Origin: Trichosphaerium sp. ATCC 40318
Lineage: Eukaryota > Protista > Tubulinea
Assembly: GCA_038496445.1 (NCBI GenBank)
Contig: JALMLS010000466.1
Span: 186,001 to 250,000, forward strand
Direction: 5' to 3'
DNA length: 64,000 nucleotides
Each line of letters starts with the position of its first letter. Position 1 is the stretch's first letter. The notes below the pieces were generated by a model that was given only the letters and a program-made list of their open reading frames with translations, was not told the DNA's origin and made no database searches. Below, piece by piece: positions 33,251 to 52,453 of the stretch. The position numbers were made by a program, and so were the translations under genes.

Positions 33251-36793
<3,543 letters not shown>

Positions 36794-50628: not shown

Positions 50629-51640
50629 GGCGGCTATATTTGGGTATAGATTACTTTAGAGACGACATACTTCCATGGTTGGCACACTATGAGATTGTAT
50701 AAGTCGTAAACGTCGTTAAGTCGCTTGTTCAGGTAAACAACTCTAATAATAAAACCATTGCTATTGTAACCATGGAAATTGTTGTCAGTACTAGTAAAAG
50801 AAAACTCCAATGAAACCATGAGTGTCATGAGATAAATACTCTTTGCAATTTTTTGTGAGGGAATGACGTGCAAGTTTAATCTTTTGATTGATTCTATATA
50901 ACAGATCCTTGTCACCAACCACGCCTATGGCCATGTGCACTACTTCAGCATTGGTAAGCGATTTACAAACTTCCGCGGTAACTGGCAGAAGCTCAGTCAT
51001 GTCAATCTCAATTATGTCGTCTGCGATGCTTTACTCCTTTTAGCGAGATAATATTTTAGCGCTTGACATCCAATCACGTGTGCACTTTTCCAAATGCTTT
51101 TACTGTTCTGTTGTCCACCTATCAAAATTCTTGCGCGGTATAACTTAGGCGCAAAGGCAATCTCTCACACCCTCATGTTGAACATTTGAAAATACTTGCG
51201 ATAGATCTAACGAGCATATTGTAACGGTGCGTAAGGTCATTACTGAGGTATGAGTTTCACTCTTTTGATACCTTTATCCTGATTACTAGATCCTATATAC
51301 GAGTCCACAACTTTAGCCGTTCAGGTGCTGCAAGCAGTGTACTTTTCGGAACGAATAACTTCAGTCTGCCTTACACGCATTAAACAAATACACTCCTTTG
51401 ATGTGTAACTTGTTTTTGAGCTCCTGTAGAGAACACACGTAGGTTTAGGTGTAACGGGCAGCTCAGTTCATACGATAAAGTAAAAATAGAGCTTTCCTAT
51501 TTTTTTCTGATAAAAATATCCAAAAAATCCACAGCACGAAAACCACTGAAATCGACACCGTTGGTAGTTTTATGTGCGATATACGCCAGTAGCGTGCTCT
51601 GTTTTTTATGAAAAAATAAAAGCTTCTAGAAGCTTCGATC

Positions 51641-51680
51641 TCCCACAATTTATTTTTTCTACAACTTTATGGGTATAAAA
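51641..51680 (+). promoter_or_regulatory. Type-3-like promoter: TCCCACAA (51641-51648) plus TATAAAA (51674-51680)
   Basis: Same motif and spacing as the RNase MRP and RNase P promoters in this window. Confidence 0.7.
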
Positions 51681-51701
51681 AGAAACGAATATATTCTAGA
51701 T

Positions 51702-52032
51702 ATCAGATGGAAGTAGTTCTCCACAGCTAGTTTCGGTTTGACTAACCGAAGCGACTCACACAAACCCCCCTTAACCTTTCGTAGTGGCTGACGAAAGTAG
51801 ACACATAATGGTCGGTCTATAAAACCAACACAAAAAAAAAAAAAAAAAGAAAAGTAACAAATCTATGAGCGGCTTCCGTGATCTGAAAGTATCGGTGAAC
51901 ATAGAACTTACTTGGTACCCACAAAAAAAAGAATTCTCAAAAAAATATCCAGCGGCCTTACCTAGGAAGTGCATCTGAATGAAAACAAATAAAAATACCG
52001 TGTCCTCACCTAGGGAGGATACTTTTGTTTTT
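51702..52032 (+). ncRNA. Unannotated structured Pol III-type ncRNA; candidate telomerase RNA
   Basis: Upstream element plus TATA; long-range pairings of the 5' end; boundary hairpin; template-like AACCCCCCTTAACC; pseudoknot; terminal hairpin followed by TTTTGTTTTT. Confidence 0.6.
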
Positions 52033-52453
52033 GTTACAAAGACAACATATCTCCAAGTACTCGGATATTAAGAAGCCCCATTAATGTAGTAACTACAAGC
52101 ACAGCGAACTGTTTTAATGAACGTAAATAGGTGGTCAAAGACGCGTGATTATGGCCACAGGCAAAATGGGTGATTTCAAGTGTAGTGAATCGCACTTGCA
52201 ATCAAGAACAAATTCTAGTTTTAAAAGTCTCTTTTTCATTTTTTGCAAAGCGCATTCACCGTTTTTTCTACAAGTGTATAGAAGAACAATATCTTACAAG
52301 GCTTTTCTGTAATTAACTGTTCATCTCAAGTGTACTCAAAAACTCATAGCGATCTTGCTTATGTAGTTAGAATTGTGAAAAGCCAGCAAGTCAGCAGACA
52401 CCAAAATCCAATTTCACGAACATTGTTTACTGTGTTTTTTTATTGTTTTAATC

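What the first reader, a model, noticed from the sequence alone, without database searches (positions are those of the whole stretch)
51641..52032. Candidate telomerase RNA gene with an unusual template, preceded by the same promoter as RNase P/MRP
Seen, in order: TCCCACAA (51641) and TATAAAA (51674), spaced as for the MRP and P genes, which predicts a start at ~51702-51706. TCAGATG (51703-09) can pair with CATCTGA (51972-78), and AAGTAGTTCT (51711-20) with AGAACT(T)ACTT (51903-13), enclosing a core. A 9-bp hairpin GTTTCGGTT/AACCGAAGC (51730-52) lies 10 nt before an unpaired AACCCCCCTTAACC (51763-76), which is one 10-nt unit plus a 4-nt terminal repeat. Next come a hairpin CTTTCGT/ACGAAAG, an H-type pseudoknot TAGAC-acataa-TGGT-cg-GTCTA-taaa-ACCA (51798-51827), and a terminal stem GTGTCCTC/GAGGATAC before TTTTGTTTTT. 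Established: the order boundary stem, template, pseudoknot, enclosing helix, terminal stem under a type-3 Pol III promoter is that of ciliate and plant telomerase RNAs, and the Tetrahymena pseudoknot is similarly compact. Inference: this is the organism's telomerase RNA, specifying (TTAAGGGGGG)n, or a shorter TTAAGGG-type repeat if only CCCTTAACC is used. I know of few characterised telomerase RNAs in amoebozoan-like protists.
Basis: partly seen in the sequence, partly recalled or inferred. Interest (0 to 1): 0.92.

Follow-up and report, generated by a model that had tools for sequence, protein, structure and literature searches.

The report
Unclassified 330-base small-RNA gene, probably not telomerase RNA
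This is a real, expressed gene for a roughly 330-base non-coding RNA, driven by the same promoter type as the RNase P and MRP RNA genes nearby and matching no known RNA family; the evidence argues against it being the cell's telomerase RNA.

Summary
TCCCACAA (51641-48) and TATAAAA (51674-80) are there, spaced as upstream of the two Rfam-confirmed genes in this window, RNase P and MRP RNA. Public cDNA contigs of a close relative (organism A) cover 51705-52034. One carries a template-switch adaptor directly before A51705, inside the predicted start window. The other end lies in the T-run. Outside one short zone the RNA shows no substitution against that relative, while flanks differ by about 3.5%.

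The telomerase reading is not supported:
- No Rfam family matches, even at E<=10.
- The "template" AACCCCCCTTAACC is at chance level: 22% of shuffles hold one like it.
- So is the pseudoknot: 76% of shuffles.
- The template zone is the only part that differs from the relative.
- The RNA has no match longer than 6 nt to (CCCTAA)n, and unverified notes from this scan report TTAGGG/CCCTAA tracts in this genome.

I could not inspect telomeric reads, so the decisive test is still open.

Best reading: a new, lineage-restricted Pol III-type scaffold RNA. Telomerase RNA: about 7%. On other DNA of this genome the scan has already flagged at least nine other telomerase-RNA candidates, most noted for a CCCTAA-type (TTAGGG-compatible) template.

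The parts
51641..51648 (+). Upstream sequence element TCCCACAA (plant-USE / Dictyostelium-DUSE-like), 64 nt before the RNA 5' end
   Evidence: The same core CCACAAT lies upstream of RNase P and MRP RNA. It is unchanged in organism A (X2 record 10). DUSE lies ~60 nt upstream of the TSS in Dictyostelia (PMC7919456).
51674..51680 (+). TATA box TATAAAA, 31 nt before the RNA 5' end
   Evidence: RNase P has TTTAAAAATA at -34 and MRP has TTAAAAG at -35. It is unchanged in organism A.
51705..52034 (+). Transcribed region, about 325-330 nt, non-coding
   Evidence: contigs of runs X1-X4 cover 51705-52034, with depth 0 on both sides in X1. The loose end before 51705 is an adaptor tail ending ...AACGCAGAGTACGGG. 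No Rfam family matches at E<=10. There is no + strand ORF of 50 aa or more.
51707..51720 (+).
   Evidence: The best 5'-end duplex has -16.1 kcal/mol against a shuffle mean of -10.4, p about 0.04.
51730..51752 (+).
   Evidence: Pair probabilities are 0.95-1.0. It is identical in organism A.
51761..51776 (+).
   Evidence: Unpaired probability exceeds 0.9. In organism A: 51761 C>T, C-run of 5 or 7 instead of 6, TTAACC > TTAAACC. At chance level as a periodic motif.
51776..51797 (+). 7-bp hairpin CUUUCGU/ACGAAAG
51833..51849 (+). Internal A17 tract; further A8 at 51924-31 and A7 at 51941-47
   Evidence: Reads are cut at 51819-51863, and a contig ends at 51930 followed by extra A's. This fits oligo-dT priming on internal A-runs.
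52000..52022 (+). 8-bp terminal hairpin directly before the T-run
   Evidence: It is identical in organism A (X1 record 8).
52023..52035 (+). T-rich terminator TTTTGTTTTTGTT
   Evidence: Contig coverage stops at 52034. RNase P and MRP RNA genes end in T9 and T6 runs.

Best explanation
A single-copy (within this window) gene for a stable RNA of about 330 nt, of a family not yet described.

**Shown.**
- An upstream TCCCACAA element at -64 and a TATA box at -31, the arrangement that this genome uses for RNase P and MRP RNA.
- An RNA 5' end at A51705.
- A 3' end in the T-rich tract after a terminal hairpin.
- Abundance in cDNA of a close relative.
- No substitution in the RNA body against that relative, while flanks diverge by about 3.5%.

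**Inferred.**
- RNA polymerase III makes it.
- The terminal hairpin plus U-tail is held by a La/LARP7-type protein.
- The RNA works as a scaffold. Three stable hairpin modules and a 5'-end long-range helix carry proteins. They are joined by unconstrained or A-rich linkers: the C-rich zone 51761-76 and the A17, A8 and A7 tracts.

**Speculative (about 25%).** The A-rich tracts may recruit poly(A)-binding protein, as in BC1/BC200 RNAs.

It is probably not the telomerase RNA.
For: **Promoter.** It is shared with the Rfam-confirmed RNase P (120.6 bits) and MRP (111.5 bits) genes.

**Ends.** Contigs begin at 51705 behind a template-switch adaptor tail and stop at 52034. Depth in run X1 is 85 inside and 0 outside.

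**Conservation.** There are 0 substitutions in about 318 nt of RNA outside 51761-72, against at least 8 in 227 nt of upstream flank (Fisher p = 0.0008). The promoter elements are also unchanged.

**No known family and no coding potential.** No Rfam match at E<=10, no coding ORF and no second copy in the window.

**Against telomerase RNA.**
- The template-like motif occurs in 22% of shuffles.
- The pseudoknot occurs in 76% of shuffles.
- Variation is confined to the 'template' zone.
- The longest (CCCTAA)n match is 6 nt.
- Scan notes report TTAGGG/CCCTAA tracts in this genome.
Against: **Function.** It is not shown; nothing here ties the RNA to a protein or a process.

**Comparison.** It rests on one close relative. 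There is therefore no covariation support for any helix, and the whole-molecule fold is no better than shuffles (z = -0.44).

**Polymerase.** Pol III is inferred from promoter and terminator. USE/DUSE-type elements also serve Pol II snRNA genes.

**The 3' third.** It lies 3' of all internal A-runs yet appears in oligo-dT-type cDNA. That is unexplained for a pure Pol III product.

**Reasons not to dismiss telomerase RNA.**
- Among known upstream-promoter Pol III RNAs of this size, telomerase RNA is the one that Rfam would miss.
- From my own knowledge: the Arabidopsis Pol III RNA AtR8 was later found to be the telomerase RNA.
- The telomere repeat of this organism was not verified by me.
- Part of the 'template' variation is homopolymer length, which can be a sequencing or assembly artefact.
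Confidence: 0.75

Rival explanations
1. It is the organism's telomerase RNA. The unpaired segment 51763-76 is copied by TERT into (TTAAGGGGGG)n, or (TTAAGGG)n if only CCCUUAACC is used. The hairpin 51730-52 acts as template boundary and a 5'-end long-range helix closes the core.
For: - It has a Pol III-type upstream promoter, as in plant and ciliate telomerase RNAs (PMC12133305).
- No other family matches.
- The C-rich segment is unpaired. It lies 59 nt from the 5' end, 10 nt after a very stable hairpin.
- A long-range helix from the 5' end is somewhat better than chance (p about 0.04).
- In organism A the changes lengthen the terminal redundancy from AACC to TAAACC and keep a 10-nt period in two of three runs (my reconstruction).
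- No amoebozoan telomerase RNA was found in the literature searched.
Against: - The template-like motif is at chance level (22% of shuffles), and so is the pseudoknot (76%). There is no U-rich/A-rich triple-helix arrangement.
- The zone is the only variable part between close relatives, and even differs among runs of one sample (C5, C5, C7). That is the opposite of what is expected of a template.
- Scan notes describe TTAGGG/CCCTAA tracts in this genome, in telomere orientation and at breakpoints, and the RNA has no TTAGGG template.
- No (TTAAGGGGGG)n array was found in the window or among the 120 metagenome loci returned.
- First readers flagged at least nine other telomerase-RNA candidates in this genome, so the base rate of this label being right is low.
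Confidence: 0.07
2. It is a strongly diverged member of a known RNA family of this size and promoter class (SRP/7SL RNA, 7SK-like RNA or U3) that the Rfam models fail to recognise in this lineage.
For: Size (about 330 nt), upstream promoter, 5'-end long-range helix and a 3' hairpin followed by U's are also features of 7SK. This organism has no close relatives in the protein collection (best about 60% identity), so RNA models may transfer poorly.
Against: - No SRP, 7SK, U3, P/MRP or snRNA model matches even at E<=10 on a 1.1-kb search space, while RNase P and MRP RNA of the same genome score above 110 bits.
- Short resemblances to human 7SL that I noticed by eye are not colinear.
- The GAUC-repeat hairpin of 7SK is absent (a single GAUC).
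Confidence: 0.07
3. The transcript is real but has no function of its own. It could be a fortuitous promoter-like pair, a by-product of the neighbouring divergent gene, or a young lineage-specific transcript.
For: The fold is no better than shuffles. A low-depth contig of run X2 bridges the upstream region and the 5' part (51579-51805), so other transcripts or DNA cross the locus.
Against: - The depth step at 51705 is sharp, with an adaptor-marked 5' end.
- The promoter pair has 0.03 expected occurrences.
- There are no substitutions in 318 nt against about 3.5% in the flanks.
- Depth is high in a very small cDNA data set.
Confidence: 0.06

Closest known systems
Plant telomerase RNA (AtTR, first described as the Pol III lncRNA AtR8) and ciliate telomerase RNAs
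   Same: Upstream USE-like element (the plant USE contains TCCCACA) plus TATA box. A T-run terminator, 150-330 nt in length, and a hairpin shortly 5' of an unpaired C-rich segment. Poor sequence conservation, so database models miss them (PMC12133305; the rest from my own knowledge).
   Different: Here the C-rich segment does not match the TTAGGG tracts reported for the genome, and it varies between close relatives. The pseudoknot is minimal and at chance level. No link to TERT is known.
RNase P and RNase MRP RNA genes of the same window (35083-35379 and 35636-35925, minus strand)
   Same: The same promoter architecture (CCACAAT element at about -65 to -71, T/A-rich box at about -31 to -35), T-run terminators and similar length.
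   Different: No sequence or structure similarity to the P/MRP models.
Dictyostelium DUSE-dependent ncRNA genes (snRNAs, SRP RNA, Class I RNAs)
   Same: An element of consensus [AT]CCCA[CT]AA about 60 nt upstream of the start (PMC7919456; the consensus is from my memory). T-run terminators.
   Different: Class I RNAs are 42-65 nt with a defined 11-nt motif, whereas this RNA is 330 nt and unrelated. The organism is not shown to be a dictyostelid or even an amoebozoan.
Metazoan 7SK RNA
   Same: About 330 nt, an upstream-promoter Pol III gene, the 5' end engaged in a long-range helix, and a 3' terminal hairpin followed by UUUU (my own knowledge).
   Different: No match to Rfam 7SK models and no GAUC-repeat HEXIM hairpin. 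7SK is unknown outside animals.
BC1/BC200-type Pol III RNAs
   Same: Structured 5' domain, a long internal A-rich tract and a distinct 3' domain. The RNA is captured by oligo-dT through internal A-runs (family features from my own knowledge).
   Different: BC RNAs derive from tRNA/Alu retroposons and use internal promoters. This gene has an upstream promoter and no A/B boxes in the right order.

Membership tests
Telomerase RNA | Template complementary to at least one telomere repeat plus alignment bases | tested here: inconclusive
   The only candidate, 51763-76, would encode TTAAGGGGGG. The longest match to (CCCTAA)n is 6 nt and lies inside a hairpin. Scan notes report TTAGGG/CCCTAA tracts, but I could not inspect telomeric reads. 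No (TTAAGGGGGG)n array in the window or among the returned metagenome loci.
Telomerase RNA | Template is the most conserved part among close relatives | tested here: not met
   The zone 51761-76 is the only place where organism A differs from the window inside the RNA: 51761 C>T, C-run 5/5/7 against 6, AA > AAA. Caveat: part of this is homopolymer length.
Telomerase RNA | Template boundary helix just 5' of the template | tested here: met
   A 9-bp hairpin at 51730-52, pair probability 0.95 or more, lies 10 nt before the segment. This is not specific to telomerase RNA.
Telomerase RNA | Pseudoknot (with base triples) 3' of the template | tested here: inconclusive
   A 5+4 bp H-type pseudoknot can be drawn at 51798-51827, but 76% of shuffles have one of that size. 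No U-rich strand is placed to form triples.
Telomerase RNA | Helix enclosing the template-pseudoknot core | tested here: inconclusive
   Two mutually exclusive partners exist for 51707-20, within 3-4 kcal/mol of each other. The 5'-end duplex has p about 0.04. No covariation data.
Telomerase RNA | Physical and functional association with TERT | not testable with these tools
   Needs TERT immunoprecipitation or an activity assay.
Upstream-promoter (type-3-like) Pol III ncRNA genes | Upstream sequence element plus TATA box at fixed spacing, shared with bona fide Pol III genes of the genome | tested here: met
   the same CCACAAT core, with 31-34 nt from it to the T/A box, as for RNase P and MRP RNA.
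Upstream-promoter (type-3-like) Pol III ncRNA genes | Transcript starts about 30 nt after the TATA box | tested here: met
   The adaptor-marked 5' end at 51705 is 31 nt after T51674.
Upstream-promoter (type-3-like) Pol III ncRNA genes | Termination in a run of T | tested here: met
   Coverage ends at 52034 within TTTTGTTTTTGTT. The exact 3' nucleotide is not resolved.
Upstream-promoter (type-3-like) Pol III ncRNA genes | Dependence on RNA polymerase III | not testable with these tools
   Needs Pol III ChIP or inhibitor sensitivity.
SRP RNA / 7SK / U3 / snRNAs (Rfam families) | Match to the family covariance model | tested here: not met
   No such family is listed even at E<=10 on 51300-52400.

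The most novel reading that the evidence does not exclude
The RNA is the telomerase RNA of a poorly sampled protist lineage. It would be made by Pol III from a USE/TATA promoter and carry a 10-nt template that is evolving fast: TTAAGGGGGG in this genome and TTTAAGGGGG in the close relative. On this reading, the TTAGGG tracts elsewhere in the genome would be relics or element-borne.
Probability: 0.07. Interest if true: 0.9.

Novelty: new member of a known kind. Interest (0 to 1): 0.45.

Why it matters
A conserved, abundant 330-nt RNA with a Pol III-type promoter and no family assignment is rare outside well-studied groups. Each such RNA found so far (7SK, AtR8/plant telomerase RNA, BC200, vault and Y RNAs) turned out to mark a distinct ribonucleoprotein.

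Here the gene boundaries are fixed to within a few bases and the promoter grammar of the genome is defined. The RNA can therefore go straight to northern blot, pull-down and knock-down. The same promoter motif can also be used to list all ncRNA genes of this genome, the true telomerase RNA included.

If the minority reading were right, it would be the first telomerase RNA from this part of the eukaryotic tree, with a new repeat type.

Tried and rejected
- **Rfam.** Gathering scan of the window and an E<=10 scan of the locus. Only RNase P and MRP elsewhere; nothing credible at the locus.
- **Other copies in the window.** Only A-run matches.
- **TTAGGG or predicted-repeat arrays in the window.** None.
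- **Metagenome scan for (TTAAGGG+)n.** It returned plain (TTAAGGG)n arrays of unrelated contigs and no 10-nt-unit array, so it is uninformative for this organism.
- **Synteny test next to the WD-repeat gene.** Impossible.
  - The exon query and another ORF found no homologs.
  - Exact-protein look-ups found no contig.
  - The best homologs of a UBC exon are only about 60% identical.
- **Scan of prokaryotic genome contigs for the 5' hairpin.** Nothing.
- **Organism identification by protein atlas.** Not informative.
- **Literature.** No amoebozoan telomerase RNA and no TTAAGGG-type telomere found.
- **Considered by eye and rejected.**
  - SRP RNA: the short similarities are not colinear.
  - Internal A/B boxes: wrong order and poor match.
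  - C/D or H/ACA snoRNA: no boxes at the ends.
  - U1-like ACUUACUUGG at 51906-15: internal and paired.
  - The resemblance of CCUUAAC to a U12-type branch site: lost in organism A, which has CCUUAAAC.
- **Loose 255-nt extension of an organism-A contig left of 51478.** It does not map anywhere in the window.

Full report
**What is in the sequence**

- TCCCACAA lies at 51641-48 and TATAAAA at 51674-80.
- The window holds two Rfam-confirmed genes on the minus strand: nuclear RNase P RNA (35083-35379, 120.6 bits) and RNase MRP RNA (35636-35925, 111.5 bits).
- Upstream of MRP there is TCCCACAA, with TTAAAAG about 35 nt before the RNA. Upstream of RNase P there is AACCACAAT, with TTTAAAAATA about 34 nt before the RNA.
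- TCCCACAA-N(15-35)-TATAAA occurs once in 64 kb against 0.03 expected.
- CCACAAT-N(18-32)-TWTAAAA occurs only at RNase P and at the candidate.
- The element fits the Dictyostelium DUSE, which lies about 60 nt upstream of ncRNA starts (PMC7919456). From my own knowledge it also fits the plant snRNA USE, so it does not fix the lineage.

**Is it transcribed?**

Yes. Four very small public runs of one sample (organism A, coded) hold the stretch. Laid on 51300-52300, their contigs cover 51705-52034 and nothing beside it in run X1, where depth is 85 inside and 0 outside.

- **5' end.** The X1 contig that begins at 51705 runs on into an adaptor tail ending ...AACGCAGAGTACGGG. From my own knowledge this is the template-switch oligonucleotide of SMART-type cDNA and marks the RNA 5' end.
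- **3' end.** Coverage ends at 52034, within TTTTGTTTTTGTT, directly after an 8-bp hairpin.
- **Internal priming.** One contig ends at 51930 followed by extra A's, and reads are cut at the A17 tract. This fits oligo-dT priming on internal A-runs.
- **Unexplained.** The 3' third lies beyond all A-runs yet has depth 61. Some molecules may carry a short A tail.

**Conservation**

Organism A is not the window's strain. The upstream flank (51478-51704) differs at 8 or more positions in 227 nt. Inside the RNA, the main contigs show no substitution in about 318 nt outside 51761-72 (Fisher p = 0.0008). Both promoter elements are also unchanged. The gene is therefore under purifying selection.

- 51761 C>T.
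- TTAACC becomes TTAAACC in all three runs.
- The C-run is 5, 5 or 7 long instead of 6.

Part of this is homopolymer length and could be technical. The substitution and the extra A are consistent across runs.

**Is it a known family?**

No Rfam 15 model reaches even E = 10 on 51300-52400. That includes all SRP, 7SK, U3, snRNA, P/MRP and telomerase families. There is no + strand ORF of 50 aa or more and no second copy in the window.

**Tests of the telomerase reading**

- **Template.** A G-free, CCC-containing segment with a 5-12 nt period and at least 4 nt of terminal redundancy appears in 448 of 2000 dinucleotide shuffles of this RNA.
- **Pseudoknot.** A 5+4 bp H-type pseudoknot within 40 nt appears in 378 of 500 shuffles.
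- **Fold.** The whole-RNA energy is ordinary (z = -0.44).
- **Hairpins.** Three hairpins are robust: 51730-52, 51776-97 and 52000-22. The C-rich segment is unpaired.
- **Enclosing helix.** The 5' strand 51707-20 has two competing partners. The ensemble prefers 51867-79. A 5'-end long-range duplex of this strength occurs in 4% of shuffles.
- **Telomere match.** The longest match to any permutation of (CCCTAA)n is 6 nt, and it lies inside a hairpin.
- **Other notes of this scan.** They describe TTAGGG/CCCTAA tracts in telomere orientation and at repeat-module breakpoints in the same genome. They also list at least nine other telomerase-RNA candidates, most with CCCTAA-type templates, and a TERT gene. 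I could not check these notes. They are raw-sequence observations by the same kind of reader whose coordinates were exact here.

The one region that should be most constrained in a telomerase RNA is the least constrained here.

**Why I do not put the telomerase reading at zero**

- Telomerase RNA is the one known upstream-promoter Pol III RNA of this size that databases routinely miss.
- From my own knowledge, the Arabidopsis Pol III RNA AtR8 was later recognised as the telomerase RNA.
- The changes in organism A happen to lengthen the terminal redundancy (AACC to TAAACC) and keep a 10-nt period in two of three runs.

I estimate 7%.

**Best explanation**

This is a gene for a new, lineage-restricted RNA of about 330 nt, made from the genome's RNase P/MRP-type promoter. 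It is most likely a Pol III product that acts as a protein scaffold.
- Conserved hairpin modules and a 5'-end long-range helix are joined by an unconstrained C-rich linker and by A-rich tracts.
- A terminal hairpin plus U-tail would suit a La/LARP7-type protein.
- Layout and oligo-dT capture recall BC1/BC200. Size and ends recall 7SK. Membership in either family was tested and not met, or cannot be tested.

**What could not be done**

- Comparison beyond organism A failed. Neighbour-gene exons have no homologs in the protein collection, and exact look-ups find no contig. The best homologs of a conserved UBC exon are about 60% identical, so the organism has no close sequenced relatives there.
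- The organism could not be named.
- The literature searched holds no amoebozoan telomerase RNA and no TTAAGGG-type telomere.

Noticed in passing
L004:5437-5499, L022:4-94, L040:3-86, L113:4108-4212, L029:1013-1054: Perfect (TTAAGGG)n arrays of 6-15 units lie at the very ends of short metagenome contigs. This is a 7-nt telomere-like repeat that I cannot assign to any organism. The orientation fits a chromosome end in some contigs (L040, L113, L029) but not in others (L004, L022). No link to this window.
   Followed up: partly
window 35083-35925 (minus strand): RNase P RNA and RNase MRP RNA genes lie in tandem, about 250 nt apart. Each has its own CCACAAT element and T/A-rich box and ends in a T-run. 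Both are confirmed by Rfam.
   Followed up: yes
window 51478-51805: A low-depth organism-A contig spans the promoter and the 5' part of the RNA. A second contig fits 51478-51592 and then continues for 255 letters that occur nowhere in the window. Either the relative is rearranged left of 51478 or a spliced antisense mRNA starts near the RNA gene.
   Followed up: partly
window 51939-52034: The 3' third of the RNA lies downstream of all internal A-runs, yet it is well covered in oligo-dT/template-switch cDNA. Some molecules may be oligoadenylated after transcription.
   Followed up: no
window 51960-51966 and 52008-52014: There are two copies of ACCTAGG, the second in the loop of the terminal hairpin. 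CCUAGG is self-complementary, so a loop-to-strand pairing or an RNA-RNA dimer contact is possible.
   Followed up: no
Its last exon ends about 420 nt from the RNA 3' end.
   Followed up: partly
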